This document shows, in pieces, positions 21,286 through 60,086 of a DNA stretch of 64,000 bases (its first letter is position 1; every line of letters begins with the position of its first letter). The stretch is from assembly GCF_000150275.1 (NCBI RefSeq), contig NW_002060971.1:413212-477211 (forward strand). Reading direction: 5' to 3'. Origin of the DNA: Trichoplax adhaerens. Lineage: Eukaryota; Animalia; Placozoa. Made by a program: the position numbers and the translations under genes. The notes beneath the pieces are model-generated. The model did no database searches, was not told the DNA's origin, and was given only the letters and a program-made list of their open reading frames with translations.

Positions 21286-22011
21286 ATCGTTAATCAACCA
21301 AGATATGCTTAGCAATTAATAAAATAGGAACTCGTTATGAAATGAGTTTGAAGGCTACTACGGCGTATTCGGATGGATAATTAGTAACGGCGAATTAATT
21401 TCGTTTTGGTACAGGTCAATGGCTAGTAATTTGCCTATATTACTTTCTTTCGGAAACAGGAGTTATATTGAATCTTAGCTTCGAAGTGAATGGATAAGTA
21501 GAGTAGTGGAGGATGAATGATTAACTTTATGTATTAGATCAATCCTTAGCGATTTTCTGAATCACCAATTCATCACAAAATGTCCTATAAAAACAGACTA
21601 AAAGTCATACCATCACTTAGTATAAATCATTAGTCATAATATCACAATTTTTAACAAAATTTTTAAGAAGAATAAATAATAAATATTAATTATTGAATTA
21701 TCAATAGTAGACTTCCATTAAAGACGATTCTATAACTGCAGATGATGAAATTTCCATTATAATTTATTAATTGATGAATTTTAAGAATGCTAAGATTAAC
21801 TCTGTTTTCATTTTCCCATTTAGCCGTAAGCAGTCACTGTTACATAATTATTAATATAAGGCGAATTAAATTCAACTGAGAATCGCCTTAGTTGATGTTT
21901 GCATATGGTATGCGCTTAATGGACCTATAAATTACTTCACGATATGGTAAGTGAAGGCACTCTTTGCATTATTGATTTCAACCAGAATGATATGGATTTG
22001 AAGTCAAATGC

Positions 22012-31214: not shown

Positions 31215-31465
31215 CTAATTTCTTATTTGGCACTTGCATGATTCAATAACCAAAACGGAAACATCCTTATTTGGTCCATTATGACATTGCGTTGCAACCG
31301 AGACTATTTTAGTTTTTTCGGCTTTGCAACAGTGCGCTCCAACTTCGCAGCCACCTTCACATTTTCCAACGTCTACTTTATTGGCTGACTGGCATGTATT
31401 TTCCGTATTAGTAATGTAATTTCTTTGAGAAAGTCGTCTGCATTCGCGTGGCTTACCCACACCGC
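31215..31465 (-). other. C-terminal cystine-knot (CTCK/DAN-like) domain exon
   Basis: [32 protein letters not shown] contains the CxGxC and CxC knot motifs; 9 Cys in total. Confidence 0.85.
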
Positions 31466-34400
31466 CTATTTGTTTTCACCAAATAATTAAAGAGCATTGA
31501 GTCAACTATTTCTAAAATTTGCTAAGTATAACTATTCTTAGAATCAAGGCATAGTACTTACCGTCAGCACATTTTCCATCATAAAGAATTGAAATATTTT
31601 TCTTATCATTGCAGGCTGCTGCTTGCAAATGGCATTCACTGTCGTAGTCGATATTATCGGTACCGCAAACTGGCGCTATAGTAACTTCTCCACATTTACG
31701 ACATGTACACCGAGGATTATTAGAATCATCAATGGTACATTCAGCTTGATAGGCGCAATTAATATTTCGACATAGTTCTAAGTCATGTATGAAATAACAT
31801 ATTATTAATATGAAGCAAACGGTATTGAATATTCTTCTTAGCAAACTTATATCGCGAAATAACTTTATATTTGTACTTTAAAAATTACCTTCAGCACATG
31901 CGGGCATATTGCATGGTTTATACTGTTTCAGGCTTGGGCATTGTTTACCGTTATCATTAATAATTTTCCTAGTCCGCTCTTTTTGGCTATCGCCGCACGT
32001 TGACGAACAAGCGCTCCAACTGCCCCATTGAGATACCATACATTCTGTAGCCCAGAAAGTTAAATTTGTGTGATGGTATAAATACTTTACTTCAGTTTCA
32101 TTATAAATACAGTCATTACTACACAATGTATAATTTTATTATGCGATATCACCGACCGATGACTATTTAAATAATGTTCTTGTAGTGTCCGCATTTACCT
32201 GGATCACAAGCACCGTTGTATTCTAGTTGTACGCTCTTGACAAATCTACAATTTGTTTTCTTAAGCTGACATTCACTACTGTAGGTAATGCCATCAGATC
32301 CGCATACTTGGGTGTTGTTAATGTTGATGTTTGCATTGGGATTATCTTCAGGGCAAACAGGGCAATCACAAACTGGCCTGTTGAGCGTCGTATTCATCTT
32401 GCATACACCATTATTATTGCAAATGACGTTCGCACAAGAAGCTGCAACAAAACAACAAGCTATGTTTTAGAGCTTCGAAAGTGCAATGTTAGCGAGCAAG
32501 AAAGATGCAGTTGACAATAGTTGTGCTATAAATTGCAAGTTCTTTGAATGAATTATCGGCTATGACTATTATTATTGCGCTTACTTTCACATCTTCCAAA
32601 ATATTCGATACCGGTATATGTTCCGTAAACGCAGTTAAGCGTTTCTAAATCTCGAATGCTTTGATAGGTTACACCATCAGTGCCACAAATTTGTCCTTGA
32701 CGGTCAGAACAGAGTTGGCAAGAGCACGTGCACTTTGGCAAATTATTTTCGTCGACTGAGCATGAGCTGCCAGGTAATTTGCAAACATCTGGTCGACAAA
32801 TTTCTACGTATTTTTTAAAAAGAGAAAGCAAGGGAATGGATTATAAATTTTTAGATGCATATATTAAGAAATTGCCAAGACAAGGCTTACGCTCGCAAGT
32901 TTTGCCATCGCCGCGATAACCATGAAGACATTGACATTTATATCCGCCGATGGTATTAACACAGTCAGCTAGTGGGCTACATTGATATTGCATTGTTGCA
33001 CATTCGTCAACATCTAATTTCGTCATAACAATGTCATGTATTATTAAATTGTGGAATCAATATAGTCTCTCAATGAATGTTACCAAATAAAAAGGCCTTA
33101 TAAATGATTTAAACAATTAATACTCACCGCTACAAGAATAACCATTACCAGTCCAACCGTTTTTACACTCACACTTGATAATATCGCCAATCCGAGAGCA
33201 TGTCGCATTAGGATGGCAATTAGATTTCTCTAGTACAGTACATACTTGAGGTTGCATTTCTGTACCCAGGATTTCAAAAAATAAACAGTAATCAGTTACT
33301 TTTAGTTATTTTAAAGCCATCATTTACTGCAGTTTTCTTGGGCTGGTGTGTCAGAAAGAAGTCAATTAATATACCTATGCATGTTTTGCCGTCTCCTGTG
33401 TACCCTGATTTGCATTTACACTGGTAAGTTCCAGCTGTATTGATACAATCAGCGTGAGTATCGCATTCATCCAGGCCAGCTGAACATTCGTTTACATCTA
33501 TGAAAGAAATTGTAAATCTTTAACTTCATAGCTAAAAATGCGTTATAAAGTATTATTTTACTGCTGGTCATAACAATTAATAGATTATGATATTCTAGCT
33601 ACATGCATACCAACGCATGTATTGCCTATATGGCGATAACCGTCGTTACAAATACAGGTATAAGATGCCGGCAGGTTAACACAGAAACCATTATAGCATA
33701 AGTTGCTAGTAACCACACACTCATTGATATCTTGTTAAAGATCAAAATATTGAAAATATGAGTTATATTAGTTTGATTATATTGTATGTAAGCATTTGAA
33801 AAGCTTACCGACGCAGCTGGTATTGTCCGCGGAGACGACATAGCCATCTCGACATTTGCATCGATATCCACCGGCTAAATTGATACATGTTTCATTCACT
33901 TGACAGGCGTGTATGTCCTCGCATTCGTTTATATCTAGTTGAAGGGTAATATTTGATTTAGAAATATGCATAACAGGATCTGACCTGCAAGATTCTCGAA
34001 TATTGTATAAGCGATTGTGTAACCGAAAATTTACCTTCGCACTCGGTACCATTCCCTCTAAAACCATGTTTACACTTGCAGAAATAGGAACCTTTAGTAT
34101 TTTGACATGTAGCGTTGACATGGCATGGAGATTTCCCTTCCGTGCACTCATCGATGTCTAAATGGTATAAATGTAGTGATTACTAATCAATAAGCTTTGC
34201 TATAGTGCAATATCATACCGATATTGAAAGCTCTCATTAGAGTTAATAAAAGTTTATCATAATAAAAATAAGTAGATAGAGCTAATAACCTACCTTCGCA
34301 AATTTGTCCATTACCCTTATAACCAGGTTTACAGATACATTTATATGAACCTTCTGATAAAAGAATACAGGTTGCATCTGCATCACAGTCATTACCACCT

Positions 34401-37400
34401 CCACTGCTGCAGTAATTTATGCCTAGCACAGATCAGATATATTACTATTTGCTTTTCCAGGACAAATTCGATTTTATATATTTAAATATTGACAAGAAAG
34501 GAAATGATTAATATGGATTAGGGATATATTTACCAATGCACTTTATCCCATCGCCCACATAACCAGACTGACACTGACAAGTGTAGGTACCAGGGAGATT
34601 AGTGCAATCGGAATCTTTACTACATTTGTTGAGCGGACTGGCACATTCGTTGATATCTACGTAAAGTGATAGAATTATTCCTGTATTCAAAAAGCCTATC
34701 TAGTTTATTAGGTTTTATAAAATAATTAGAAATGTATACCATCACATGAAGTTCCATTTCCGGTATATCCAGAGTCACATTGACATGTAAACGATCCTGC
34801 TGTATTAGTGCAAGTTGCCTTGCTATGGCAATTATGGTCTCCAGTTGCGCATTCATTTATATCTGGAGAGGTAGAAATTTATATTTATAAACTACAAATT
34901 ATCCTTTTAGGGGTATCAGCAGCCAACTGAGCTTGTTACCTTGACAGAACCAACAGTTTCCTTCATATCCAGGTTTGCATGTGCACTTGTATGATCCAGG
35001 TTCATTGACACATACAGCAAATTGTGAAACGAGAAAAACTTCGCATTCATTTATATCTAATGGGAGGAATACGTTACAAAATTTGTCATGTATATTTCAC
35101 AATTCACAATCTCCAATTAATAGTCAAAATAGAAGCGCTTATAGCTAATAGTAAATGTAGGAATTACCGTTGCAGCTTTGACCGTTACCATAAAATCCTG
35201 AATTACAAACACATTGGTATTGGCCGGAAACGTAAGAGCAACTTGCGTTTTGTCCACACTGGCTTGAAACTGAGCTAGGGCAAAAATCGCTTGGGGTACC
35301 TATGTAAATGTGTATGTACATAGTTATGCAAAGGCAGTTAATATATAAATGCAATTATCTACGCTTCAATCATGCTATTTATAGCTCATTTAATAATATG
35401 CCAGACTCGAGGATGTACCTTTCAAACAGTTACCATTTACAAGTGTGAAACCAGCTTGACAACTGCAAGAATAGCTACCGACTGTATTAGCACAGATAGA
35501 GTTATTGCCGCAGATATTTGATATTTGGCATTCATTGATATCTGATGTGAAAGATGGAGAAAATGAAAATATTTACAAAATTATCTGACGAATACAAATT
35601 TTATTATTATTATCTGAAAACATACCGGTACAAAGCACTCCTGAGCCACTATAGCCACTTCTACAAGTGCAAGTGTGTGATCCAATGGTATTAATACAAT
35701 TAGCGTAAACACTGCAGCTATCTAAATTCTCTGTACATTCATCGATATCTACAAAAGTGGAAATAGAAAATGTTTACGATGATATGTTCAGCTTACAGGT
35801 AGCTTATTGATATTTGTAAAATAAAATTACCATCGCAATCACGGCCAGGAGCTGCGGCACTATTATCACGGTATCCGGATTTACATGTACAATCGTAACT
35901 GCCATCAGTATCAGCACAAATTGCATTTGGACTGCACTCATTTAGTGATGGTAGAGCACATTCATTGATTTCTAGATGACAGTTTGATTACAGCCGTTTC
36001 GAATCGATTAAATGTTAATTACCTAACGATATTTATTATTCATTTTGTACTTCTGCTTTTATTTCAAAATCAATTTCAATTGTATAACTTACGTTGACAA
36101 GTTATTCCATCACCGACGTAGCCCGTCTTGCAAACGCATTTATACTTGCCTCCTTGATAGATACATTCAGCAGCTGCGATGCAATCATTACCTCCTATAG
36201 TGCAGTGGCCAGGATCATTTTGGGTAACTTGATCACATATTTTGCCATCACCTGAATATCCTGTCTTACACTGGCATTGATATGATCCATCCGTATTGAC
36301 ACAATCAGCATTCGATGAACATTGAGCAGTGCCAATTATACACTCGTTTATGTCTGTATTATATATGATAAATATTAGCATATAAATTCTAGTATAAAAA
36401 TTGACGAAGAATATTAAATTAACGCTGAAAAATGGTAAATTGAATACAATACCGTAGCAATTGCCACTAGCGGATTCTGTGTAGCCATCTTTACATTTGC
36501 AATGATAGGAACCGATGGTATTATTGCAAGTACTATCGTAATTGCAAGCTCCAGTAGAAGCCTGGCATTCATCAATATCTAAACCAGAATATAAATTTAA
36601 TTTTAATAAACTGCAATTTTACTTTAACGTAGCATAGATCAAAGCCCGATAGAAAACCACTATGCTTACCGGAGCATGACCTCCCATCACCAGTATATCC
36701 AGGTGAACACTTGCATTCGTACGATCCCCACTGATTAATACATTTTGCATTGACATGACAATTGTCAATTCCGAGAAAGCATTCATTGACATCTGTAATA
36801 GTAGCCGAAATATTATAATTAAGTATCTGTTAATAACCAACGTAAGTTAAGGAGCGATACATAAAAACTGACCATAACAAATTCGTCCGTCACCGTGAAG
36901 ACCAGGCTTACAACTACATGTGTAGGAGCCAATAGTATTGTAACATATCGCGTTTGCATCGCATTTACTTAAGCCAGCGAGACATTCATCGATATCTAAA
37001 ACAAAATAAGTATCGGTACTAGGCTTACCAAACAATCAATGAGAATTATGCGGTATTTTAAACAAAACTATCATTACGGCAGTAATAGCTCCAATTTACC
37101 TTCGCAAGCCTCACAATGTCCTATAAAACCAGAGTTACACACACATTTATAGGATCCAATCGTATTAACACAACGTGCATTTGCTTTACAATTTGCTGTT
37201 CCAGTAGTGCATTCATCAATATCTACAGCAATACATACATAAAAAATATTCAAACCTTCTACTGCACCTAAATCTTTGAACAGAATTGAAGTATTATTTT
37301 AGCAAAGTATGCCTACCAGTACACTGTAGGCCGTCACCGCTAAAGCCATCTTGACATGCACAAGTAAAGGATCCGATAGTATTTGTACAAATAGCATGAG

Positions 37401-40400
37401 CATGACAGTTATCAGTATTAAGGGCACATTCCGGAATATCTATAAATAGAATGAGCGATTGAAAATTTCAATTATTTTGAAATCATACTGTAAATTTATT
37501 TGCAATTATTGAGATGAATTGTGCCTTGTATGTGAATATTTAATAATAGCATCATCGATGAAATGGATTAAAGATTCTAGCGATAGTTCGGTGGTTCTAT
37601 TACCTTTGCAGTTATCCCCATCTCGAGTGAATCCGTTTCCACAGACACACTCATAAGATCCAGGATTGTTGATACAAGTTGAATTTCCAACGTTAATGCA
37701 AGCATTGCTATCGTCACATTCATTTATGTCTAAATTATTGAAATAATAACATTAATTACAAGTCTTTATAGTTACTATTTCTGATGGTGCTTAGTTATTA
37801 TTTTCTCTGAAGCTTAAATAAGTAGTTCATAGTCAAGATGTGGCGGTATTTATCCATCAAAATAAGAAATAGGATAATTTACCGTCACAGTTATCTCCAT
37901 TATATCCTTGATTACAAACACAGGTATAAGAACCAACTGAATTTTCACATGTAGAGTGTTGCGGGCATGCATTAGCATTGTTACACTCGTCAATGTCTAA
38001 GATGACACGAAATGGTAAAAACAGCAGAGTTTAAGATAATTAGACGTTGAAAAAAATTTAATCAGTCTATAATTGTGATCTTACCTTCGCAACTTTTACC
38101 ATCACCACTATAACCCGCTTTACAAACACAAGAATAGCTACCGGGGTTATTGACACAATTAGCGTTCTCGTTACATTGATCTTTCATTTCAAGACATTCG
38201 TCAACATCTACATTTATCCAAATTAAGACACCTTGTTTAAATTAAGACTTTATGGTACCGCTAGAAGTTAGTTATAAGTGTATCTAGAGTGATAAATTAT
38301 TAACTGATTTATCTAACTATACCCTGACAAGTTTTTCCATCGCTGCCTTTTTTGTAGCCATTACTACAATTACACATATAACTTCCAACCGTATTTAAAC
38401 ATATAGTATTATTTTTGCAGCTATTCGTACTAGTTTTGTTACATTCATCAATGTCTAAAAGACAAAAAATTCAATAAACACAGATATAAATGATTCTGAT
38501 TATAAGTTCAATTAATATTATTATTATGGCAGGAAAGTTACCATCGCATGATTGACCATTGCCTGTATATCCGTTGCGACAGTTACAAGTAAATGAACCA
38601 TCGTTGTTTACACAGGTTGCTTGTACATCGCAGTTATGACTATTTTCGGCACATTCATCGATGTCTATATCAATACGAGAAATATCGATAATAAGTTAAT
38701 AACATGGTAATTATAATAATGACTGCTGCCATATATAAAATCTATCCCTTGCGGTATAAAATATAAATCAGAGAGATGCAGGCCATTTACTAGAACATAA
38801 TCACCTTTACAACTGCTACCATCACTTCGGTAGCCATTAAGGCACGAGCATTGGTATGAACCAAAAGTATTAACGCACTGAGCATTGCTTCCACAAATGC
38901 CACTCATTTTGCACTCGTCGTCATCTTAATATTAAAAGTAAGGTATTTTAGTCTTAATGCAATTAAAGTTCTTATGCGTCATTGTAACAACATCTACATG
39001 CAGTTAGGTTCATTTAATAGATTAGCAAATGCTAGAAATCGATAAATATTTATTAACCTGTACAGTTAACTCCACTGCCAACAAAGCCAATTCTGCATTT
39101 ACATGTAAAACTACCAGCTGTATTGACACAATCAGCATTTGCATGGCAGTTGTCAGCGCCATTTCGACATTCATCAATATCAGTACATGAAAGTCCGTCG
39201 CCAGTGAAGCCCGATTTACAAGAGCAATCATATGAACCGATATTGTCAATGCAAAGTGCATCTTTATGACATTTATTAGGTTCAGCACATTCATCAATAT
39301 CTAGTGTTGTATTAAAAAAACATCGGATTAATTATTCTGCTTATCCATTGCTTATAAGATTCGAATTTGATATTTTAATATTACTGTAATATATTTAAGC
39401 TCGAGGTGGCCGAATAATTTTAGGTTATAGGTTTTTATATCTTACTTGTACAGGTTTTTCCATTTCCAGTATATCCGCTATTGCATGTGCATGTGAATCC
39501 ATTTCCAGCTGGGGTGCAATAAGCATTAGCGTCACAGTCACTTTGTCCAGCTTTGCATTTGTCTATAGCTATTTTGATAGACAATATGAAATTGTCAAGG
39601 GCGAGAAGTCAAAAACAAGAAGTAGTCTATTTTAAACATTTTATCATGTTTAAGTTGCAGGTAGACAACATTTCATAAATATACTTACTAAAATTTTAAA
39701 CATTTAACCGAATGAAACGAAATTTAAAATATCAAATTGCGATTGAACTATTTTTATTCGAGGCTCAGTTTAAGGCCTAAATTCCATGAGGTATAATAGT
39801 GTATATGCAACTTTAGATATAATCTAAATTTCTGTTTAAACATCATTGAAAATTTTCGTTTAGTACAATTTACCTGAGCATGTGTAGCCATTACCGGTAA
39901 AACCAGGCTTACAACTACACTGGTATGAACCAGGGGTATTAACACAATTTGCGTTCTGACTACATCGGTTGTCGGAGCTCCTTTGACATTCATTTGTATC
40001 TATAGACATATATTTATTACAAGCAAGTTATGGATTATGCAAGTTCTTATAAAGAGGACTGTAGCATGGTGTTTTTAGTAATTACTTTAAGTGTGCTAGA
40101 CTACGACTACATTAAGCCCAATTTTCATCGGTTAAAGCACTTACCATTACATACTAATCCATCTCCAGTATATCCTGTATTACATTGGCATTTATAGCTT
40201 CCAATTTGGTTAACGCATGTTGCATACGGACTGCATTGGGCTGATCGTTTCACGCATTCATTAATGTCTAAAAATTGAGTGGAATTTAGAAACGTGCGCT
40301 GATGCCAGTTGTGTATAATGTTGATCAATGTACAATTTAATATCAAGAGTTGAAATAACTAATATAATTTGATCAATTGTTAGAGTGTAATATAATAATA

Positions 40401-49400: not shown

Positions 49401-52400
49401 GTCATTTAAGTCAGCTGAAATAGTTCTACAGTATACTTTTGGGCTTTCAAAATTTCTATACACAAGCTGTACACATCCTTTTTATAGGAATACCACTAGA
49501 AAGGAATCTAAGTCATATAACTGTTTCTAGAAAGGAAGTTATCAAACTTTAATACGGTCATGCTACAATGATCTCTTTTATGAAAGCTCTTTGCTGCTGA
49601 CACAGTACAATAGTGTTTGGTCTTCTAAAAGCTCGCTTTAATTAAAGAATGGATTATTACTTGAAGGGATTAAGTAAACCTGCAGTATATGTTGCAATCT
49701 GTTACTATAGTATCAGTTATATGATTAACCTATTTTCATATCGACTGTTTGTAATATCGATTTAGTGATATTACCATTGGAGGAATTCATGATTTAACCG
49801 ATACTAGTGCAAATCCTACAATAGCGATTATGTTAAGATTATCGAAAAAGTTACCATAAGCATATGTTGAGCAGCGTAAGGGTCCAAGAAAGAAACGAGC
49901 TCGCATGGATGCCGAATTTCCTCCCATTTTCATTTCTGTGACAGGTAAATACCTTTTATCAATGATTGGACCGAAATCTGTTCTAAGTACGTTGTCTGCT
50001 TTATCGCAATTGCATTTAGCATTCGGGCCTCCGACACAAGTACCGCTCATTCCACATAAGCAACCTGTCCAACCGTCACTGCCACCCCAGTAATTCATGT
50101 TAACACCTTGGCGAGATACCCAATAACTCATTAAATTACCAGAATTATCGGTCAATCTAGCATGCCTACATTGGTATTTGACTTCTTGGATACAAGATTG
50201 AGATACGTCGATCAGCTGCTTTAGCTGATCCAAGTCAGCATGTTGATACTCAACAGGGGATTTATGAGCATCAGGTCTGTTTAATCGATGAAGTGGCACA
50301 CCAGCAGCAGGAATATTGTGTTGAATCACGGTTGTAAATCCATCGCATCGTGCATAAAACTAAATTATTGAACAAGCAGAAGAAAATAATCATTATGCAA
50401 TCACAGTGCAAAGTAAAGTATTACTTTGATTCTAGAATTTACCGGTTTTAGATCACCAATACCATCAGGATCGATCGTGGTTAATGAAGAGCTACCTTTA
50501 CGTTTAGCGCCGGGAATATAAGCGCATGCAGCATATATATCTATAAACATATTTCAAAGTACTCATTAGGTTTTGCTACCGTAAATATTCGTATGTTTAC
50601 TTTAATCGTCGATCCAAAGTGACTGTAATACTATGATCACTCTGATAAGCTTGATTATAAAGGTGCATGCAGGTTATATATATCTGTAATAATATTTTTA
50701 CGTATTCATTAGATGTCTGTACCGTAAATAGAATATTTGACAAGACATCTTCATTTTCATTAACATGATTCTACCTTTGCGTAGGATTGTTAGGATCTTA
50801 TTAAATTTAATACCTGAGCAAATCAATCGGCCAACTCGAACAGCTTTATATTGATTTCCTGATATACCCTCGACTTCTATTCCTTTAATTGGAAGCCTCC
50901 TTCGATCTTTAACGATTCCTTTATCACGGCGTAAAACATTGTCGCCTTTATCACAATTGCAGCCAAAGTTTTTACCACCGCTACATTTGCCATCAACACC
51001 ACAGTCACTTTTAAAATCCTGCCGTGAATTTCCCCAATAGTTCATTTTATTACCATTTCTGTCAAGCCACCAGACGCTGCTTTGACGTCTACCAGCTTTG
51101 ACATACATGGGAGCTTTTTGACAATCGTAGACTAATTCTTGGCCACAAGCTGCTGATACTTCGACTAATTTGACTGCTTGACTATAGCTTACACGATAAT
51201 CTATCGAATGTACATATCGAGAGTTGTTCACTGGGACTGAGTCTTGTTTCGTATGAGTTAGAATGGTTAAAGCATAGTCAGGATCAACATGCATTTCGCA
51301 CCGAACATAGAACGGCTGAGAATTGCCTATTTCATCATCGAGCAAAATGATACAAGAATTTATGAAACAGGTACTTTAAGAGCTGATGAATAAAAATTGA
51401 GCTGCAAAGACTTACCATCAGGGCCATCAGGGTCAATAAGGTAAGTTCCACTATATCTATGTCCAGCATCAAAAGCCTCTTGGCAGGTTCTTGGTATACC
51501 TTTATAGTTTATGCAAGATGATTTAATAAATCAAGTTTACTTAGAGGCATGCTACGTTGAGAAAAATGTACTCTATAGAGCAACCAAATATATGAGCTAA
51601 CGAGATAAACGGAAGCCACAAATTACTGATTGTACTTTACAGTTAATTATGATATATTCTTAACTGAATGGATTCTAACATACCAAATTGACGTGATGAA
51701 CACTTTAGCGAGCCAAGTGTAAAGTTAGCGGCACTATTTGATTTTACCATGGAATTAAATCTAACAATTTTAACTGGTAAATTATCCTTGTCAGTAATTA
51801 GTCCACCATCTCGGCGTCTTTTACCATCTTCAAGATCGCAATCGCATACTTGGTTTGGTCCACCAGCACATACTTTGCTGTAGCCGCATGGACAACCTTT
51901 ATAGAATTTGGTTATACTATTGCCCCAAGTATCGACCTTCTCTCCTTTTGGTGAAACCCAAAAAGTTCTTGAACGAGTTCCTTTAAATAATGGCGCGTTA
52001 ACGCATTCAAAATTGATATATTGCGAGCAAAATCCGGACACTTTAGTTAAGGCAGTCAGCTGAGGCCAATCGACTCCATTATATCGTACATCTTGATTAT
52101 ACGAATCTTCTTTGCCAGAGCGGAGCCGAATCACTTCCGCTAAATCATGTCTAATCTCTGTTATCCCTAGGCCTTTTATGGTATCAAAGTCGCAATAGAC
52201 AGTAAATGGCTCAACACCACCTGAACCTGTGAATAGTATATTTAGAACAGTAGTATATCATCAGAAAGAAAGTATAGCTTCAATCCATAATTTCAGAGCA
52301 GCTTTTAATAGTTACGTACCGTCTGGATCAATAATATAAGATCCACTTTTAGAATTTGGATTGCGTTGTCTAATTGCTTCACAATCTCTAAATATTCCTA

Positions 52401-55400
52401 ATTAAGGTGTTGGAAATTTAATTTTTAAATCAGTGTGGTAATTTTATAAAATTTCGGTTTAAATCATTTCAGATTCAACACACGATTATTCGATTATTTA
52501 TGTCATAGGTACGAACCAACTGGAACGGGAGAACAGTAGAGCTTGCCCAAAGAAAATTTTCCTTCTCGAGGCGGTTTTGCATCGCCAAGTCGTAGTTCCT
52601 TAACTGGTAATGCATTCTTGTCAATAATCAGTCCTCCATCACTAGTTTGCCCATGTCTACCATCACAATTGCAAGCAGCGCCAGGGCTACGGCAAGAACC
52701 TAAAATTCAATTGTCATTATTGATTTAATCTTAAATCATAGTTATGCAATATACGAAAGATCAGATCAGAACCATCAACGACAATTAAATGCAATGAGAA
52801 TTTGTGTTTTGTCCAATAGTAACCTGTGATGCCGCATGCACATCCTTGCTCATTTCCGGTTACACCGCCCCAGTAGTTCTTAGCATTTCCATTTCTATCG
52901 ACCCACCAACCATATTTATAGGAATTAGAGGTCATAAGTCGAGAATTATGACATGTATAGGAGAGTTCTTGATAGCAAAAGTTAGACATTTTAACGTAAG
53001 CGACGACTTGCTGTAAGGAGGCACTGTAATACTGAACAGATACTCTGTAAGATCCGGCACCATTATAGTTGTATCCTTTGACCTAGAAAAGAAATTGAAA
53101 ATTATTGTCTTTGGTAATAGGCTTATTGGTGTAAAACATGACTACAGAAATGTAAATTTTAACGATATAACAAATATGGCTTGCACAGACGCCATACACG
53201 ACGAAAAATTGAACATTAGCTCTTTAATTTCGTTTGCAGACTTTGCTAACAAGAAATCAAAGTCTTACTGTATTTCATTTTGAAATGCCGTACTTTTTCT
53301 CGGAGTTAAGATTACTACTTTGCAGTGCAATAGTAAATGGAATTGGCTTACATAAATATCGAATAAAATTTCTATAAGATATGCGTAATTTGCCCTTAAG
53401 TGAGCGAATAAGAAATTGCATAAGAATTTCACATTTAACGAAGCTATACTGCATAGGTTTACACCAGTTTCAAAAAGTTCTTTTTCCCTGGACTAGCTGT
53501 ATACATTGAATATTCGTTCTAGTCATCTTAAACCTTAACATGTTTATTTATATATTGTATCCTTGATACTCCATTTTACCAGATCACCTTAATTTACTGC
53601 AATAATTATAATCTTTGATGTTTCTACGTGTTATGCATTATTTTTGTGTTGTATGGCTGTGAGTCAAATTTGTAATCATGTATTCTTGGTTTACTAAGCG
53701 CGTTCGATTACTTCAACGGTATCTGACATTGAGCAAAACAATTTTCTACAGTAATAAGCTTACGTTTCCGCATAAACGATTATGTGAAATTACACCAACT
53801 CCAAAAGAATGGTGCGACATATCGCAGTAAACTTTAAATGCTGCAATTGGTCCAGAGCCATCTGGGTCGACAGTGAAATAGCCGTTGGCTTTGGTTTTTG
53901 TCTTCTTTTTAATCTCATCGCAAGAAATCGGTATTTCTAAAGTAAAAATATTTCAAGATATCGAATGCCTTATTAAGTGGATTAGCTAGAAATATCGTTG
54001 CAATTTGCTTCTGTAATTGAGCTATCTAAATTTAAAATTGTCTCAGAGATTTTTTATTTTCCATGGTAGGGCATTTGTAGTTATTTCTGCTGTATGGATA
54101 AATTTCAAATCACTTGTTTGAAATTTAAAACTTACTCTCACAATTTTTTCCATCTCCTTTATATCCTGGTCTGCAAGCGCATCTATAACTTCCAGGCATG
54201 TTAAAGCAATTCGCCTGAGAATGACATGTCGAGTTGGATTGTGCGCATTCATTTATATCTAATAGAGTTAGTAAGATTTTTGAGTTGAGACCAATTTGGG
54301 TAATTTACATACGCGTTGTTGAAATAAGATTAAATCTAGCAATATAATTTATACCTGTGCACTGAAATCCATCACCCTTAAATCCAGGTTTACATTGACA
54401 TTTATACGAGCCAGGGTTATTGTTGCAAATAGCTTGGCTATGGCATCGATGAGCTCGTACTCGGCATTCGTCGATGTCTAAAACAGGAGTTATGGGAGAT
54501 GATTAGTTACAGGCTAACTGTTAGCGATCTTGTCGATTTTAGGAAGTGAGATCCTTCACCTAATTTTAAAACTTACCTTGACAATGCTTTCCATTACCAA
54601 TATAACCAGTTTTGCATTTACAAGTATAGGAGAGAGGAGTATCGGTACAAATGGCTAACTTATCGCATTGATGTTTACCATTAGCACATTCGTTAACGGC
54701 CTCTGTAATTGACATAACAAATAAATTTCATGACCTCTATTAATCCGATCATGGTCAAGTTAATGAAATAAAGTTGTTAGTATTACTTACTGACACAAGT
54801 TCTCCCGCTAGCAACATATCCAGTTTTACATTTACACAAATAAGTACCAATCACATTGACACAAACAGCATTTTCGTCACAATGCGCCATTTGGGATGTA
54901 CATTCATCAATATCTAAGCAATAGTTTATGAATAAAATTGCAAATTATCATGCGCGCTGTTTATAATATTAGACAAAAGTTTGATTTTGGTTATGTTGTA
55001 ACAGTCACCATTTTTTAATTGATGAAAGGCCTAAATGATTAATATACCTTCGCATGAAGTACCATTTCCATGGAAGCCATCATTACAATTGCAACGGAAT
55101 GATCCTTGTGTATCATGACAGCTTGCATTAACATGACAGTTATGCGTTCTCGTATTACATTCATTGATATCTAAAGGCAATGGAATTGGATGCTAATGTT
55201 AAAAATTATTCCAAATTATCATTTACAATCTTCATTAATATGTTATTCACTGTCTTAGAAGATTGTTTAATTTCAAGCATTCCCTCAGTAGATTATAACA
55301 TAATGGAGAAGTTCACGTTATTCAATAGTCTTAATTTTACAATACAATTCACGAGATAAAAAGGTAATTTGCTCTGCTTACATTAGTGGTATTTCCATAT

Positions 55401-58400
55401 AAGTAAGATTTCGAAATATTAATACTGTGCATTATAAATAACAAATTTCATTTGCGAAGTAGTTTCAAAATACATATCAGTTGTAATTATACTGTAACTA
55501 TCATTTTTAAAGGCATAGGTTATACTATACGATTTAGTGAGAAATTTATAGTTATATTTACTTCAAGAAGTACTGTGAATTTCGCAACTTTGTGTTATAG
55601 GAATTGAGAATTACTGATATGAGAAGGGGAGTTTTGATAGTAGAATAATATAAAATTGGGCTGCTCCTTCTGAACAGTTAGGTCATATAGATTGTATTTA
55701 AATGACTTTGTGTTATTAGGAATCAAGGTTTACTAATATTACATGAAGGATTTTAATGGCGGAATAATATGAAGTTGGACTACTCCTTCCGAACCATTGA
55801 GTTAAGTTGGATGAAAATGGTATTTAAATGACTTTATGTTATTAGGAATTAAAATTTATTAATACGCGTGGGGGTTCAGTGGCAGAATAATATAAAACTG
55901 GACTGCTCTTTCTCAACAATTGAGCTATATTGATTGCAAATGGTATTTAAATAACTTTGTGTCATTAGGAATTAAGGTTTACTAATATTACATGAAGGAT
56001 TTCAATGGCGGAATAATATAAAACTGGGTTGCTCCTTCTGAAGTGTCGAGTTACATTGATTGAAAATGATACTTAAATTTGATTAATTAACTGTTAATCG
56101 GCTGAAGTCCATTAATTCGATGGTAAAGAACAATGACTCTATCAAGTTATCGAATAAATAATTGCTTACTGTAGCAGGATCGTCCAGTTCCTTGGTAGCC
56201 ATTTCTACAGCGGCACGTATAAGAGCCATCTGTGTTCGCACATGTTGCCGTGCCTCGACATGGATTACTAATTTTACATTCATCAATGTCTATTCGGACA
56301 ATAAAAACATGAAGAAGGCAGCAGCCCATTAATGTTTTTTCAGTATCAAAATTTTAAGCTATAGAAAATATCCTGTCTATGAATATCTCAAACATTTGGT
56401 GAAAGATATCCGTTAAAGAATTGCAGAATTTATAGCATTACCTATGCAGCTACCGTTGAACACCTTATAGCCATGACGGCAAACGCATTTATACGATCCA
56501 TAAGTATTTTGACATACCGATTTTCTCATATTGCAGGGATTGATGTTGGGTAGACATTCATTTATATCTATTGCAAAATCGGAAGGCAATGCCGTAAAAT
56601 ATAAATAATCAATTTATCATCATCACTCTACCAGCTTGATCATTTTGTGAACAAAATGAATCGTCGCGTGATTTCTATTATTTATTTTCGTGTGGTGTAC
56701 ACTATGTTTATTGTGGAGAAAAGACTCGTTCACCCTATTTTCTATTTATTTTAAATCTGATTCCGGTTCTATTCTTTTATGAAATTTAGCTTATGGCTAT
56801 AAGATTTAATAACAACACTTAATTGCATATTAAATACAGTTGATGATTAACTACAGCAAATACCAGAAATTTAAATTGTTACCCTAAGGTTATTAATTAG
56901 TAAAGTCATTGACTAGACGTGCTGTGAGTCCTCTTGCATGCCTTTTATTTCATCTTTGAGTAAAAATTATTAGGTGCATAGTTGATGTATTTTACATTTT
57001 AATTATTGCAATAATGATTTCGACATTTGTATATTGTTAGTATTGAAAGCTAATTACAGTAAGGGATAAAGCAATGATTGAGTTATGTCGTAGATTTAGA
57101 TTTCGTATTGAGGTTAAACTATCACGGGGTACAGACTGATTAAATTAGATGTTGTAACGCAATTTAACATACGCATAATTATAATACAAATAAACTTAAC
57201 TCCACCAGCATTGTATGATTCGCTAAAAGTCAACTACATGACATAGTCTTCTCAATTAATTAAGTTAAACAGAAGAATATTGTACACTATTTAAAGTACT
57301 ACATAAAATTATTTCGAAGATAATTGTGTAAAATTACTGTCATGCTGATGAATGATTTGTTTAGGCATTTTAATGGCAGTATGTTTGAGATCTCTGTCTC
57401 CTGTACTCATTCTTAAGGTATGATCTTGATTAAATTTTGGTAGAATGAACAGAAAAGTAGATTACTATGCCATCATGGTAAAAGATAATCTATCATGGCA
57501 TAGTAGCAAAACTACTTTCAAAGAGATTAATAGCAAATTCAGCTCATAGCCCACTGCTTATATAAATAAGAATGTGCTGCATAATAATAATTATTCAATA
57601 GGTAAATTAACAAAAGATTTTGTTTTCTAGCAAAATATGGTCAAAATGTATAAAAATAGTAATCGAATTGACTGTCATAATAAATTTGAAGCATCGTGTT
57701 ATGACTTCTGTTAACACACAATTGGAATAATTGAGATAGTATAGGAAAACTCTGTTTGTTCATATAATATAAGGTTACTCAGAATCAATCTTACCTCTAC
57801 ACTGGTTGCTACCGCTACTTTGGAAGCCAAGTTTGCAATTACAACGATATGATCCTATGGTATTAACGCAGCTTTGGCTATGCTTGCTGCAGCGATGTCG
57901 GTTGCTGGTACATTCGTTGATATCTAGTGTTATATTAAATTTACGGACGCATCAATATTTTTGTTAAGAGCGATAGCATTGGATCGATTTCCTTTGATTT
58001 TATAAATTCGTAATCGAGGTATTTTGTAGCTGTAATATATTATCAATTAAGGATCATGAAGTAAAGAAATTAACACTATGAATACACTTGTTTCGTTATG
58101 TTAGTAGATTAAATCAATAGTTGTTATTTTCTTGGCTAACCCTTGCAGACTTTTCCACTGCCTTCGAATCCATACTTGCACTTGCAGGTATATGAACCTC
58201 TTGAATTATGGCATACCGCGTTTTGATCGCATGGCTTATTTCTACAGTCATCCATATCATTACAATGATATCCATTGCCAGTAAAACCACTTTTACAAGA
58301 GCAATACCACCGGCCACCTAACATTTTGCAACTTGCATTTTTGTCACATTTATTACATACGGATTTACCGCCATATCTACTATTAGACTTACTATGCCCT

Positions 58401-60086
58401 ATATTCAGTCAAATGGGAAAAGGAATTGAAAATTTTTTAGGACTATTAATTAGATAACGCACTATCTATATATTGAAGAGATAATTTATTAAAAATGAAA
58501 ATCTTCTTATTGTTTCAAGTGACTGAAGTAATAAGTCATATTTATGGCATTAACTTAAATTACAAAGAATGAGTGTAGCTGGGAACTATTTTATAACGCT
58601 TTAAAGATAACCCTCTTAAATCGAAGGTAGAAGTGGTATTCATATTATTTAGGGCATGCTTCTTACTACCTATATCTTTAGTTAAAATTTTGAAATTGCT
58701 AAAGCTACAAGGCCATGTAGTTTAAATCAAAATTAAAAATTTATTCAGTTTTCACTTAGGCGATCATTATATGTTAAATTCTTTAGCGCAGTTGGACGAC
58801 GAGCTAAAGTGAAGTAGATGAGATATTTTAAGTGGATTTAGCGTAATAGAATAGTTTACTAAAGCTCAATGTGTATAATTGCAATAGTCAAATTAAAGGT
58901 CAACTGTAACACTAATTCTAAACGTATTTTTCTTCTGTTTAATTTTAACTGGTAAAGTAAACCGTAAAAACTGTTATACGGTAAGATTTTTATTAATTAT
59001 AAAGTTTAAATGGCATTTTGGCTAAACTCCTTCGGTCTCATTTTCATTTAGAACAACAAAGTGTAAATGGGACGATATGGGGTGTTCTTACTTAGATTTA
59101 GTACTAATTTCGATAATAATTCGAATAAATTTTGGTTTTACTTTGCGCCCGGAAATGGATTGTTAAAGCTACAAGTTCGAAGTTTTAAATCAGATAACTA
59201 AACCTAGCCCCTGGTATTAGCTTTTTAACTGCAAAGATTAAACTTTCAATCTGCTACAAGAGACGTAGTTAAGATAGTTGCAATACAGGTAATATTTATT
59301 AATTCTAGGATATTTGCTCCATTCTATTTTAAAAGCAATAGCATGATAAGAGACTTTACATCAAAATAAGGCTGACGATCATTTGTATTCCTATTAATTC
59401 TCTTCAATTCAATTTCAGTCTAATTTAGCATAACTGAAAATAACCAACATTAAGTAGATTCTTTACTAATGTACTGATAAATTCGCTCATACGAGGTTTA
59501 AATCGAATCTTAAGCGAAAACGTAAAATTACTTTCTTTTGCTCTTAGTTCTTTTTACGATATGAACGTGATTACTGAGATTCAGTTGTAGATGGTATTTC
59601 AGTCAAATAAAAATATGTAACCGGATGTATATATACTAGCTAATATTTCTAGAAAATGATATAATTAATAATCTAGCCTTTTCCATAAAATTCACTCATG
59701 GTATTTATATGTCGAAAAAGTAAAGAGAATATTGAAATTTTACTTAGAATTAAATTAAAATGATTAGAGAAGAATCATGTTCCAAGCTGATCATTTAATA
59801 TAATACTACAGCAAGGTTTTGTGTTGGATGTGATAGCTGAAGGTGTAAAATTTTTAGTTTTAATAAATGAGATCTTTGTGTTGGCAATATCCTCGTTTTA
59901 GCGATATCACAGCGAGATGATCAATTAAAATGGAAAGAAATTAATACTTAATTTCTTAATAGATTAATAATTGGATTATTTAGCGAGATTAAATACGAAA
60001 AAGTGCAAAAATACTGTTCGAATTAACTTACCTGCGGCATTGGATATAATGCTAACCAAGAAAATTAGCACTAAAAATTTACGCAT
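31215..60086 (-). CDS. Giant secreted cysteine-rich mosaic protein (about 82 exons, about 4,500 aa): SP-EGF10-(CASPR-type FBG-like)7-EGF3-VWD-C8-TIL-TILa-EGF~43-FS-FS-TSP1-FS-CTCK
   Basis: A chain of GT-AG exons runs from a signal-peptide exon ([19 protein letters not shown]) to the stop at 31215; phases were compatible at every junction I checked. Domain motifs were read directly from translations. No transmembrane segment was seen. That all exons form one transcript is inferred from phase continuity and the absence of internal stops or a second signal peptide. Confidence 0.85.
31562..32803 (-). other. Follistatin/Kazal x2, TSP1, follistatin/Kazal exons (32803-32585, 32441-32199, 32044-31889, 31777-31562)
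   Basis: The [30 protein letters not shown] and ICGTDGVTY Kazal cores are each preceded by a 4-Cys FOLN segment. [24 protein letters not shown] is a spondin-type TSP1 repeat. Confidence 0.9.
32891..43125 (-). other. Array of about 43 EGF domains (mostly calcium-binding), nearly one per phase-1 exon; the first exon also carries TILa
   Basis: Repeated D-I-[DN]-E-C...C.N..GS[YF].C.C..G[YF].G[DN]G..C exons of about 120-130 bp separated by short introns. Confidence 0.92.
43462..44811 (-). other. VWD-C8-TIL assembly (VWF/mucin/zonadhesin/FCGBP type)
   Basis: [22 protein letters not shown] and [19 protein letters not shown] (VWD); [25 protein letters not shown] (C8); [28 protein letters not shown] (TIL). 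Confidence 0.93.
44926..45609 (-). other. Three EGF exons linking the FBG-like array to the VWD domain
   Basis: Includes [30 protein letters not shown] and [29 protein letters not shown], plus a third DINEC exon. Confidence 0.85.
45839..53936 (-). other. Seven tandem fibrinogen-like (CASPR/neurexin-IV/axotactin-type, COLFI-related) domains, 19 exons
   Basis: Each copy of about 200 aa has C.....G.Y.IDPDG.G...PF...CD, T.I.H, QL..L...S..C.Q...Y.C, W....G....WGG.....C.C.....C......CNCD......D.G.I.DK..LPV and LG.L.C. Copies start near 53936, 52397, 51499, 50541, 49158, 48001 and 46935. Confidence 0.85.
54136..58398 (-). other. N-terminal block of 10 EGF domains (9 exons)
   Basis: Exons near 58398-58141 (2 EGF), 57924-57796, 56567-56443, 56289-56170, 55170-55048, 54913-54791, 54702-54577, 54477-54355 and 54258-54136, each with the 6-Cys EGF pattern. 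Confidence 0.88.
55585..56078. repeat. Intronic tandem repeat, 4 copies of about 123 bp
   Basis: gaataatat..a.tgg..tgctcctt recurs at about 55643, 55762, 55885 and 56011, with actttgtgttattaggaat between copies. Confidence 0.88.
60032..60086 (-). other. Signal-peptide exon of the giant protein
   Basis: ATG at 60086 gives [19 protein letters not shown] (basic, hydrophobic, then small residues). A phase-1 GTAAG donor is compatible with the next exon [18 protein letters not shown]. Confidence 0.8.

What the first reader, a model, noticed from the sequence alone, without database searches (positions are those of the whole stretch)
31215..60086. Giant secreted hybrid of mucin/VWF, fibrillin-like and CASPR-type modules: candidate novel polymerising matrix, mucus or adhesive protein
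Seen: one reading frame of about 4,500 aa with a signal peptide, about 56 EGF, 7 CASPR-type fibrinogen-like domains, one VWD-C8-TIL unit, 3 follistatin/Kazal, TSP1 and a terminal cystine knot. No transmembrane helix, no PTS mucin domain and no fibrillin TB domain. Established: VWD-C8-TIL plus CTCK drive disulfide polymerisation of VWF and gel-forming mucins, and tandem cbEGF arrays form Ca-stiffened rods in fibrillin. Inference: a tail-dimerising, rod-shaped fibre or gel former in which a cbEGF rod replaces the glycosylated PTS spacer and a multivalent head binds ligands. I do not recognise this domain order as a named family. If the host is a placozoan, it would be a candidate for the gliding mucus/adhesive layer or a cryptic extracellular matrix.
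Basis: partly seen in the sequence, partly recalled or inferred. Interest (0 to 1): 0.85.

Follow-up and report, generated by a model that had tools for sequence, protein, structure and literature searches.

The report
Giant secreted EGF–VWD adhesive-matrix protein gene
This stretch of the Trichoplax genome is one large, expressed gene for a secreted, cysteine-rich matrix protein from an old, unnamed animal family; one limpet member has been found in adhesive foot mucus, so it is a candidate glue or matrix component, not a new kind of molecule.

Summary
It is not one reading frame but a minus-strand gene of about 80-95 small exons and roughly 4,500-4,900 aa in Trichoplax adhaerens.

- **Confirmed parts:** signal peptide, about 55 EGF (mostly Ca-binding), seven CASPR-type "fibrinogen-like" domains, one VWD-C8-TIL-TILa unit, three follistatin/Kazal modules, TSP1 and a terminal cystine knot. 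There is no TM helix, PTS region or TB domain.
- **Transcript evidence:** RNA contigs splice exon 1 through ten exons into the first fibrinogen-like domain.
- **New here:**
  - The "fibrinogen-like" domains fold like procollagen C-propeptides (Z 12), not like fibrinogen.
  - The VWD carries a conserved GDPH self-cleavage motif.
  - The whole domain order is colinear with uncharacterised proteins of molluscs, annelids, nemerteans and flatworms, each with exactly seven such domains.
  - One member, limpet P-vulgata_2, was found by proteomics in pedal adhesive mucus.
- **Paralogue:** a tandem paralogue lies just upstream. This scan had already reported that paralogue on other DNA with the same family verdict.
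- **What is not supported:** mucin/VWF-style polymerisation, because there is a single internal D assembly. Placozoan mucocytes also use a different, PTS-bearing mucin.

Most likely role: a cohesive scaffold of secreted adhesive mucus or matrix.

The parts
60032..60086 (-). Exon 1: start codon and signal peptide ([19 protein letters not shown])
   Evidence: RNA contigs of three runs join it to 58397 across a 1,633-base GT-AG intron. The frame stays open across the join.
54136..58397 (-). N-terminal array of 10 EGF domains in 9 exons (58397-58141, 57923-57795, 56567-56442, 56289-56170, 55170-55048, 54913-54791, 54702-54577, 54477-54355, 54258-54136)
   Evidence: All nine introns are seen as GT-AG joints in RNA contigs. 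The joined exons give 435 aa without a stop, and 8 of 9 inter-EGF junctions read C-x-D-I-(D/N)-E-C. EGF_CA hits.
45839..53936 (-). Seven tandem CASPR-type fibrinogen-like (COLFI-fold) domains. Approximate spans: 1: 53936-52517; 2: 52401-51682; 3: 51530-50803; 4: 50553-49853; 5: 49204-48104; 6: 48038-47048; 7: about 46950-45839
   Evidence: ORF pieces; alignment A1; HMM hits per piece. The loose end of RNA contigs at 54136 matches 53936-53907. The profile hits neurexin-4/CNTNAP proteins. AF2 model pLDDT 91.9; best fold match is the procollagen C-propeptide.
44925..45609 (-). Three EGF domains between the seventh fibrinogen-like domain and the VWD
   Evidence: EGF_3 and EGF_CA hits on 45631-45479 and 45357-45079.
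44128..44811 (-). VWD domain in two exons, with a GDPH motif at 44788-44777
   Evidence: Pfam VWD E 3.9e-12 and 7.6e-21. GDPH is conserved in the paralogue and in nine relatives: eight colinear family members plus the partial-architecture Acanthaster protein. Best PDB sequence match is FCGBP 8rde, E 9.5e-99.
42951..43949 (-). C8 (43949-43736), TIL (43665-43463), and TILa fused to one EGF (43206-42951)
   Evidence: Pfam C8 E 5.6e-21, TIL 4.2e-11, TILa 3.4e-10.
32891..42877 (-). Long array of about 41 EGF domains, mostly Ca-binding, nearly one per exon
   Evidence: Pattern count; Pfam EGF_CA on sampled exons; phase-1 exons dominate the rough model.
31562..32803 (-). C-terminal cassette: FOLN/Kazal 1 (32803-32567), FOLN/Kazal 2 (32459-32199), TSP1 (about 32044-31924), FOLN/Kazal 3 (31845-31562)
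   Evidence: Pfam Kazal_2 E 2.1e-5, 1.1e-7 and 3.2e-13; TSP1_spondin E 5e-15. The same order is found in the orthologues and the paralogue.
31215..31465 (-). C-terminal cystine knot (CxGxC ... CxC) and stop codon (31217-31215)
   Evidence: Pfam Cys_knot E 7.5e-4, 20.2 bits against a cut-off of 24. PDB sequence hits are only Norrin (E 0.005) and VWF CK 4nt5 (E 0.04). The pattern is conserved at the C-termini of the orthologues.

Best explanation
One expressed Trichoplax adhaerens gene encodes a secreted glycoprotein of about 4,500-4,900 aa. Domain order: signal peptide, 10 EGF, seven CASPR-type (COLFI-fold) domains, 3 EGF, GDPH-VWD-C8-TIL-TILa, about 41 cbEGF, Kazal-Kazal-TSP1-Kazal, cystine knot. 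It belongs to an unnamed, conserved family known so far from Placozoa and Spiralia, and one limpet member is a component of adhesive pedal mucus. Proposed working (inferred): the protein is secreted and the VWD self-cleaves at GD/PH. The two chains stay disulfide-linked, as in FCGBP. The C-terminal cystine knot pairs two molecules tail to tail. The tightly linked Ca-binding EGF arrays form stiff spacers. The seven-domain head and the D assembly bind other matrix or mucus components. The molecule would then act as a cohesive cross-linker or scaffold of the secreted adhesive mucus or extracellular matrix, not as the gel-forming polymer itself.
For: Shown. Domains. Transcript: GT-AG joints in three RNA runs link exon 1 through ten exons to the first fibrinogen-like domain, with an open frame. 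Colinear architecture with exactly seven fibrinogen-like domains occurs in Lottia, Patella, Pecten, Mercenaria, Dreissena, Liolophura, Lineus and Dimorphilus, and on 8.5-kb intronless Logan contigs; the Macrostomum model is colinear but truncated at its N-terminus, with six copies detected. The tandem paralogue is colinear at 44-84% identity. GDPH is conserved. The VWD is closest to FCGBP, whose GDPH sites are all self-cleaved and held by disulfides (PMC8267560). Eight of nine tested EGF junctions have the fibrillin-type C-x-D-I-D/N-E-C linkage. No TM or PTS segment. The ISH primers of P-vulgata_2 encode YECTAS and NCNCGI, and both occur exactly and in order in the Patella caerulea orthologue. 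P-vulgata_2 was detected by MS in all three limpet pedal mucus types (PMC7333891). Flatworm ap1, which shares the VWD-C8-TIL-cbEGF core, is needed for adhesion by RNAi (PMC6410801, PMC6745481).
Against: There are no expression-site or protein data for Trichoplax. RNA support covers only the first 6 kb; the remaining exon chain rests on homology and a rough model. The cystine knot is weak by sequence, and the dimer prediction gave no verdict. GD/PH cleavage is inferred from the motif alone. The limpet protein's role in adhesion is itself untested, and its in situ hybridisation gave no specific pattern. Trichoplax fibrinogen-like copies do not pair one-to-one with spiralian copies in a tree, so the shared count of seven could be partly coincidental. 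Placozoan mucocyte mucus is already ascribed to another gene (PMC11452194).
Confidence: 0.6

Rival explanations
1. It is an internal extracellular-matrix scaffold between the epithelia and around fibre cells (microfibril-like). It would give tissue cohesion rather than act as a component of externally secreted adhesive or mucus.
For: Fibrillin-type tight cbEGF linkages. Kazal/FOLN, TSP1 and cystine-knot modules are typical of basement-membrane and matrix proteins such as agrin and SCO-spondin. The COLFI-like fold is otherwise known from collagens. Placozoans carry matrix genes without a visible basal lamina (PMC3308698).
Against: The only family member with protein-level data was found in secreted pedal mucus (PMC7333891). 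There is no TB domain and no collagen repeat.
Confidence: 0.2
2. It is an extracellular binder or regulator of growth factors or proteases. The follistatin-type modules and cystine knot would trap TGF-beta/BMP/Wnt-class ligands, or the Kazal modules would inhibit serine proteases, with the rest serving as an anchor.
For: Three FOLN/Kazal modules, a TSP1 repeat and a Norrin-like cystine knot form a conserved C-terminal cassette.
Against: The cassette is under 10% of the protein. The bulk is structural repeats. No reactive-site analysis was done.
Confidence: 0.08
3. It is an innate-immune agglutinin or clotting factor of the hemolectin/FREP type, binding microbes through the seven-domain head and cross-linking through the VWD and cystine knot.
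For: The combination of VWD and cystine knot recalls hemolectin/hemocytin. The head domains carry a 'fibrinogen-like' label. The animal feeds on biofilms.
Against: The head domains have the COLFI fold, not the fibrinogen-C fold; no FReD appears among the top 50 structural matches, and Pfam Fibrinogen_C scores below its cut-off.
Confidence: 0.07
4. The stretch holds two or more genes (for example an EGF/head gene and a VWD/EGF/knot gene) that only look like one.
For: RNA joints were examined only for 54101-60100. No annotated Trichoplax protein spanning the locus was found in the protein collections.
Against: Independent gene models and intronless transcript contigs in many spiralians carry the same parts in the same order in one protein. 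The tandem paralogue repeats the whole unit from signal-side EGFs to cystine knot. There is no stop-rich intergenic-sized gap after 54 kb, and only exon 1 has a signal peptide.
Confidence: 0.05

Closest known systems
Limpet pedal-mucus protein P-vulgata_2 (Patella vulgata; Kang et al. 2020, PMC7333891) and its database orthologues (Lottia V4AG22/LOTGIDRAFT_230443, Patella caerulea SNE40_010470, Pecten LOC117321874, Lineus LOC135497618, Dimorphilus DgyrCDS8121)
   Same: The order is the same: EGFs, seven CASPR-type domains, GDPH-VWD, TIL, cbEGFs, Kazal/TSP1/Kazal cassette, cystine knot. There is a signal peptide and no TM.
   Different: The Trichoplax protein, like those of Lineus, Dimorphilus, Liolophura and Macrostomum, has about 40 cbEGF in the second array, against about 5-10 in limpets and bivalves. 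Its seven head domains do not pair one-to-one with the spiralian ones in a tree. The seven head domains were not recognised in the limpet paper.
FCGBP (IgGFc-binding protein) and the D assemblies of gel-forming mucins and VWF
   Same: A VWD-C8-TIL(-TILa) assembly. FCGBP is the best PDB sequence match. The GDPH motif sits at the start of the VWD. A C-terminal cystine knot is shared with mucins and VWF.
   Different: There is only one D assembly and it is internal. There is no D1-D2-D'D3 head, no PTS region and no VWC/VWA. Head-to-head multimerisation is therefore not expected.
Fibrillins/LTBPs
   Same: Long tandem Ca-binding EGF arrays with the C-x-D-I-D/N-E-C linkage.
   Different: No TB/8-Cys domain. 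Placozoans lack TB domains altogether (PMC3308698).
CASPR/CNTNAP/neurexin-IV
   Same: The head domain is the same sequence family as the single 'fibrinogen-like' domain of CNTNAP1/2 and neurexin-4 (E about 1e-39 to 1e-45). Trichoplax has five such CASPR-like genes.
   Different: No discoidin, LamG or transmembrane parts. Seven copies in tandem instead of one.
Fibrillar procollagen C-propeptide (COLFI; PDB 5k31, 4ae2, 6fzw)
   Same: Best and only clear structural match of the head domain (Foldseek E 1.7e-6, TM 0.54-0.58; VIA-align Z 12.0 over 157 residues). Weak sequence echo.
   Different: No triple-helical Gly-X-Y region and no stalk. The Pfam COLFI score is below the family cut-off. Trimerisation is not implied.
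Cohesive proteins of temporary adhesives: flatworm ap1 (Mlig-ap1, Mile-ap1) and sea-star Sfp1
   Same: Large, cysteine-rich, secreted proteins with a VWD-C8-TIL plus cbEGF core. Sfp1 also self-cleaves into disulfide-linked subunits (PMC6410801, PMC6745481, PMC9382459).
   Different: Those proteins carry C-type or galactose-binding lectin, discoidin or Lys/Arg-rich regions instead of the seven-domain head. They lack the Kazal/TSP1/knot cassette as described. Macrostomum has both ap1 and a separate member of the present family.

Membership tests
Unnamed EGF / 7x CASPR-type domain / VWD / cbEGF / Kazal-TSP1-Kazal / cystine-knot family (Lottia V4AG22, P-vulgata_2 type) | Seven tandem CASPR-type fibrinogen-like domains after an N-terminal signal peptide and EGF run | tested here: met
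   Seven copies in the window and in the paralogue; exactly seven in nine spiralian proteins.
Unnamed EGF / 7x CASPR-type domain / VWD / cbEGF / Kazal-TSP1-Kazal / cystine-knot family (Lottia V4AG22, P-vulgata_2 type) | A single GDPH-bearing VWD followed by TIL/TILa, then cbEGFs, then a Kazal/TSP1/Kazal cassette and a terminal cystine knot, all in that order | tested here: met
   Exon-wise Pfam; colinear BLAST map on the orthologues; GDPH conserved.
Unnamed EGF / 7x CASPR-type domain / VWD / cbEGF / Kazal-TSP1-Kazal / cystine-knot family (Lottia V4AG22, P-vulgata_2 type) | Position-by-position orthology of the seven head domains | tested here: not met
   FastTree on 206 columns: each spiralian position forms a clade (support 0.83-0.99), and Trichoplax A/B copies pair by position. 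But Trichoplax copies do not join the spiralian clade of the same position. The signal may simply be too weak.
Gel-forming mucins / VWF | N-terminal D1-D2-D'D3 assemblies (three or more VWD) that drive head-to-head multimerisation | tested here: not met
   VWD was found only at 44811-44128. All other non-EGF exons were scanned and none is a VWD.
Gel-forming mucins / VWF | Central Pro/Thr/Ser-rich O-glycosylated (PTS) domain | tested here: not met
   No 40-residue stretch above 45% P+T+S in any model exon; the maximum is 0.38 per 60 residues in the orthologues.
Gel-forming mucins / VWF | C-terminal cystine knot that dimerises | tested here: inconclusive
   CxGxC...CxC pattern; Pfam E 7.5e-4, below the cut-off; Norrin and VWF CK are the only PDB hits. 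Dimerisation was not shown.
Fibrillin / LTBP | TB (8-Cys, CCC-containing) domains interspersed among the cbEGFs | tested here: not met
   No CCC motif in any exon. Placozoans lack TB domains (PMC3308698).
CASPR / CNTNAP / neurexin-IV | Discoidin, four LamG, EGF and a transmembrane helix around a single fibrinogen-like domain | tested here: not met
   Only the fibrinogen-like domain type is shared. The LamG and TM context occurs at five other loci, L007-L011, not here.
Fibrinogen-related domain (FReD) proteins, Pfam PF00147 | Fibrinogen beta/gamma C-terminal globular fold | tested here: not met
   The Pfam hit is confined to one small exon, at 17.5 bits against a cut-off of 22. No fibrinogen-C structure appears among the Foldseek or VIA-align top matches.
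Fibrillar collagen C-propeptide (COLFI, PF01410) | COLFI fold at the C-terminus of a Gly-X-Y triple-helical chain | tested here: inconclusive
   The fold is met (Z 12.0). The sequence score is 24.3 bits against a cut-off of 26.2. No collagen repeat is present, so this is a fold relative and not a collagen.
Flatworm ap1 / sea-star Sfp1 cohesive adhesive proteins | Lectin (C-type, galactose-binding) or discoidin modules, or Lys/Arg-rich regions, beside the VWD-C8-TIL-cbEGF core | tested here: not met
   The core is present. No lectin or discoidin hit in any non-EGF exon.

The most novel reading that the evidence does not exclude
The family is a pre-bilaterian adhesive or cohesive mucus scaffold, used for substrate attachment and gliding in placozoans as in limpets. 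Its conserved seven-domain COLFI-fold head would be a so far unrecognised assembly or ligand-binding array. GD/PH self-cleavage would yield a reactive end for covalent cross-linking. This would tie the CASPR 'fibrinogen-like' domain and the collagen C-propeptide to one ancient fold used for extracellular assembly.
Probability: 0.3. Interest if true: 0.7.

Novelty: new member of a known kind. Interest (0 to 1): 0.5.

Why it matters
- **Age of the family:** a protein known only as one entry in a limpet mucus proteome now belongs to a family that reaches back to the placozoan-bilaterian ancestor. It keeps the same module order, and a head of seven domains that standard annotation does not see.
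- **Fold reassignment:** the 'fibrinogen-like' domain of CASPR/neurexin-IV proteins is predicted to have the procollagen C-propeptide fold. This bears on how that domain is interpreted in the neuronal proteins.
- **A testable candidate:** Trichoplax adheres and glides without organs and has no visible basal lamina. This gene gives a concrete, expressed candidate for the cohesive part of its adhesive layer or hidden matrix.
- **Limits:** it is not a new kind of molecule, and its function remains inferred.

Tried and rejected
- **PDB searches with single head-domain exons:** no hits. A profile gave only a weak COLFI echo.
- **Complex prediction on two copies of the cystine-knot exon:** no verdict. 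This is not evidence either way.
- **Annotated Trichoplax protein for this locus:** not found. None of the 150 best representatives is above 70% identical to the window. Two long-protein searches found none. A Kazal-exon search had no candidates. I therefore could not look the gene up in the cell atlases.
- **Cell-atlas paper (PMC10580291):** no gene-level information in the text or in the held supplements.
- **Accession and locus names of the orthologues:** they occur in no searchable paper.
- **Whole-gene exon model by dynamic programming:** it overshoots. It reads through some introns, misses three small exons, and gave 4,904 and 5,292 aa in two settings. I use it only as a bracket.
- **Macrostomum family member as adhesion protein Mlig-ap1:** rejected. 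Mlig-ap1 has Lys/Arg-rich regions and a C-type lectin, with 17 EGF.
- **Whole spliced protein:** it was never joined for any search or fold tool. Every window query was a single exon by reference, and the whole-protein architecture search is left out.

Full report
**What is there.**
The window is G000:C1386:413212-477211 of a 105.6-Mb, 1,414-contig, roughly 30% GC genome. A CASPR-like locus of the same genome is 99.7% identical to TRIADDRAFT_52048 and lies on a contig of identical length, so the organism is Trichoplax adhaerens.

Between 60086 and 31215 there is no long ORF; the longest is 215 aa. The minus strand instead carries a dense chain of short open pieces that read as extracellular modules.

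**Domains, tested exon by exon by reference.**
- Pfam finds VWD in two exons (E 3.9e-12 and 7.6e-21), C8 (5.6e-21), TIL (4.2e-11) and TILa fused to an EGF (3.4e-10).
- It also finds three Kazal modules preceded by FOLN-type cysteine patterns (2.1e-5, 1.1e-7, 3.2e-13), one TSP1 (5e-15) and a weak cystine knot (7.5e-4, below the cut-off).
- The knot exon's only PDB sequence hits are Norrin and the VWF CK domain. It has the CxGxC and CxC hallmarks, conserved at the C-termini of the orthologues.
- A pattern count gives about 55 EGF, about 40 of them with the Ca-binding consensus. All ten sampled exons hit Pfam EGF families, and nine of them hit EGF_CA.
- No exon has a TM-like, PTS-rich or CCC-containing stretch, apart from three places where my rough model reads through introns. 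Complete orthologues have only N-terminal signal peptides.

**The seven head domains.**
Seven copies lie between 53936 and 45839. Pfam is nearly blind to them: only the first small exon gives sub-threshold COLFI and Fibrinogen_C hits.

The same domain occurs once in each of five other loci of this genome, flanked by LamG-like ORFs, an EGF and a TM segment. That is the CASPR/neurexin-IV layout.

A profile of eleven copies (A1) was searched against 1.84 billion representatives and found 2,584 proteins. Among them are bona fide neurexin-4 and CNTNAP1/2, matched at residues of about 600-800 with E of about 1e-39 to 1e-45. 'CASPR-type' is therefore confirmed.

An AlphaFold2 model of copy 2 (main exon, 37-row alignment, pLDDT 91.9) matches only fibrillar procollagen C-propeptides clearly:
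- Foldseek E 1.7e-6, TM 0.54-0.58.
- VIA-align Z 12.0 over 157 residues for 5k31_A, with the next match at Z 6.2.
- No fibrinogen-C structure is listed in either search.

The domain is therefore a COLFI-fold module, whatever its traditional label.

**One gene?**
Contigs of three RNA-seq runs (X4, X5, X7) were laid on 54101-60100.
- They show nine GT-AG introns on the minus strand, chaining exon 1 (Met and signal peptide, 60086-60032) through nine EGF exons.
- Their loose end at 54136 matches 53936-53907, the first head-domain exon.
- The ten exons give 435 aa with no stop.
- This was the part of the gene with the longest introns, and so the likeliest place for a gene boundary.
- One further joint (54915 to 58281, AA..CA, 21-base side) looks like an assembly artefact between EGF repeats.

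It rests on three points:
- A tandem paralogue lies 6.7 kb upstream on the same strand (C1386: about 479,970-510,993). It repeats every module in the same order at 44-84% identity.
- Independent gene models in other animals carry the same order in one protein (below).
- 8.5-kb intronless Logan contigs encode a complete 2,604-aa member.

My dynamic-programming exon models are imprecise and bracket the product at about 4,500-4,900 aa in 80-95 exons, mostly phase 1. No joined model was given to any search or fold tool, and the whole-protein architecture search is left out.

**The family.**
The best hits of the head-domain profile each carry seven copies, and all are 'uncharacterized':
- Lineus longissimus (5,886 aa), Lottia gigantea V4AG22 (2,658), Pecten, Mercenaria, Dreissena, Babylonia and Lymnaea. 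The N-terminally truncated Macrostomum model (4,265) shows six.
- Further searches add Dimorphilus (5,422), Liolophura (5,476), Patella caerulea (2,659), Mactra and Pinctada.

A labelled BLAST map shows the same order in all of them: EGFs, seven head domains, VWD, TIL/TILa, a variable number of cbEGF, Kazal/Kazal/TSP1/Kazal, then the cystine knot. Nine full-length spiralian members have exactly seven head domains.

Partial versions exist in Saccoglossus, Amphiura, Patiria, Acanthaster (3 head domains plus 3 VWD) and the jellyfish Rhopilema (EGF plus 4 head domains).

A GDPH motif at the start of the VWD is conserved in the window (44788-44777), in the paralogue and in nine relatives, one of them the partial-architecture Acanthaster protein.

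A FastTree of all copies gives three results:
- Each spiralian position is a clade (support 0.83-0.99).
- The two Trichoplax paralogues pair by position (about 1.0).
- Trichoplax copies do not join the spiralian clade of the same position.

Whole-architecture homology is therefore strong, but one-to-one descent of the seven copies is not shown.

**Link to the literature.**
Kang et al. 2020 (PMC7333891) list P-vulgata_2 among the proteins found by mass spectrometry in all three types of limpet pedal adhesive mucus. It is 2,500 aa with a signal peptide, vWFD, 11 EGF, 2 Kazal and 1 TSP1.

Its two in situ primers (supplement) encode YECTAS and NCNCGI. Both occur exactly, in order and 250 residues apart, within head domains 6-7 of the Patella caerulea orthologue P0254. 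P-vulgata_2 is therefore a member of this family. Its roughly 1,400 unannotated residues are the seven head domains.

Related findings from the literature:
- Its in situ hybridisation gave no specific pattern in that paper, and its function is untested.
- Flatworm ap1 proteins share only the VWD-C8-TIL-cbEGF core and are needed for adhesion by RNAi (PMC6410801, PMC6745481).
- Sea-star Sfp1 is a self-cleaving cohesive protein with related modules (PMC9382459).

**How it most likely works.**
Shown:
- It is secreted (signal peptide, no TM).
- It is transcribed and spliced, at least at the 5' end.
- Eight of nine tested inter-EGF junctions have the tight C-x-D-I-D/N-E-C linkage of fibrillin-type Ca-stiffened rods.

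Inferred:
- Self-cleavage at GD/PH, with the chains held by disulfides, as shown for FCGBP (PMC8267560). FCGBP is also the closest solved relative of this VWD (E 9.5e-99).
- Tail-to-tail dimers through the cystine knot, by analogy with VWF, mucins and Norrin.
- A seven-domain head and a D assembly that bind partners.

A single internal D assembly gives no basis for VWF/mucin-type head-to-head polymers. I therefore read the molecule as a cohesive cross-linker or scaffold of secreted adhesive mucus or matrix, not as a gel-former. The rivals are an internal matrix scaffold, a growth-factor or protease regulator, an immune agglutinin, and more than one gene. They are listed with their tests.

**Novelty.**
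The architecture is not unique and not categorically new. It is a new (placozoan, duplicated) member of an unnamed family whose only studied member is a limpet mucus protein.

An earlier report of this scan on the neighbouring paralogue (s1-742972) reached the same family verdict on other DNA. I confirmed it independently here. I add the limpet link, the COLFI fold, the conserved GDPH, the RNA-supported 5' exons and the copy tree.

Noticed in passing
G000:C1386:479970-510993 (L001-L004), 2.8 kb beyond the window's end: A tandem paralogue on the same strand with the identical module order, from the two-EGF first coding exon to the cystine knot. It is 44-84% identical per module and carries its own GDPH-VWD.
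   Followed up: partly
L007:2745-6714, L008:1716-7368, L009:3263-6537, L010:3325-7228, L011:2431-7239: Five CASPR/neurexin-IV-like genes (LamG, fibrinogen-like, LamG, EGF, LamG, TM), each with a single-exon copy of the same head domain. L011 is TRIADDRAFT_52048, named 'Contactin-associated protein-like 5' in Trichoplax sp. H2.
   Followed up: partly
window 54915-58281: RNA contigs of three runs also show a non-canonical joint (AA..CA, skips 3,365 bases, only 21 bases on the short side). It is probably an assembly chimera between near-identical EGF exons rather than exon skipping.
   Followed up: no
window 54101-60100: The RNA runs (organism B) differ from the window at many sites (95-99% alike), while the presumed DNA run X1 (organism A) shares only some of these differences, which suggests a different strain or haplotype. 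Low-level intron coverage is also present in the RNA runs.
   Followed up: no
window 46-438 (-): An ORF with a bZIP-type basic region and leucine zipper (…KAAKRSRDARKERETRITQE… followed by heptad leucines). It is likely the last exon of a PAR/C/EBP-like transcription factor.
   Followed up: no
window 650-1402 (-) and 20617-21315 (-): Gln/Pro-rich low-complexity ORFs of 250 and 232 aa with no obvious domain.
   Followed up: no
P0013 (Acanthaster planci XP_022108975, 3,748 aa); P0018 (Chiloscyllium punctatum, 1,332 aa): The same head domain occurs in other uncharacterised architectures: three copies followed by three VWD-C8-TIL assemblies in a sea star, and two copies in a shark protein.
   Followed up: no
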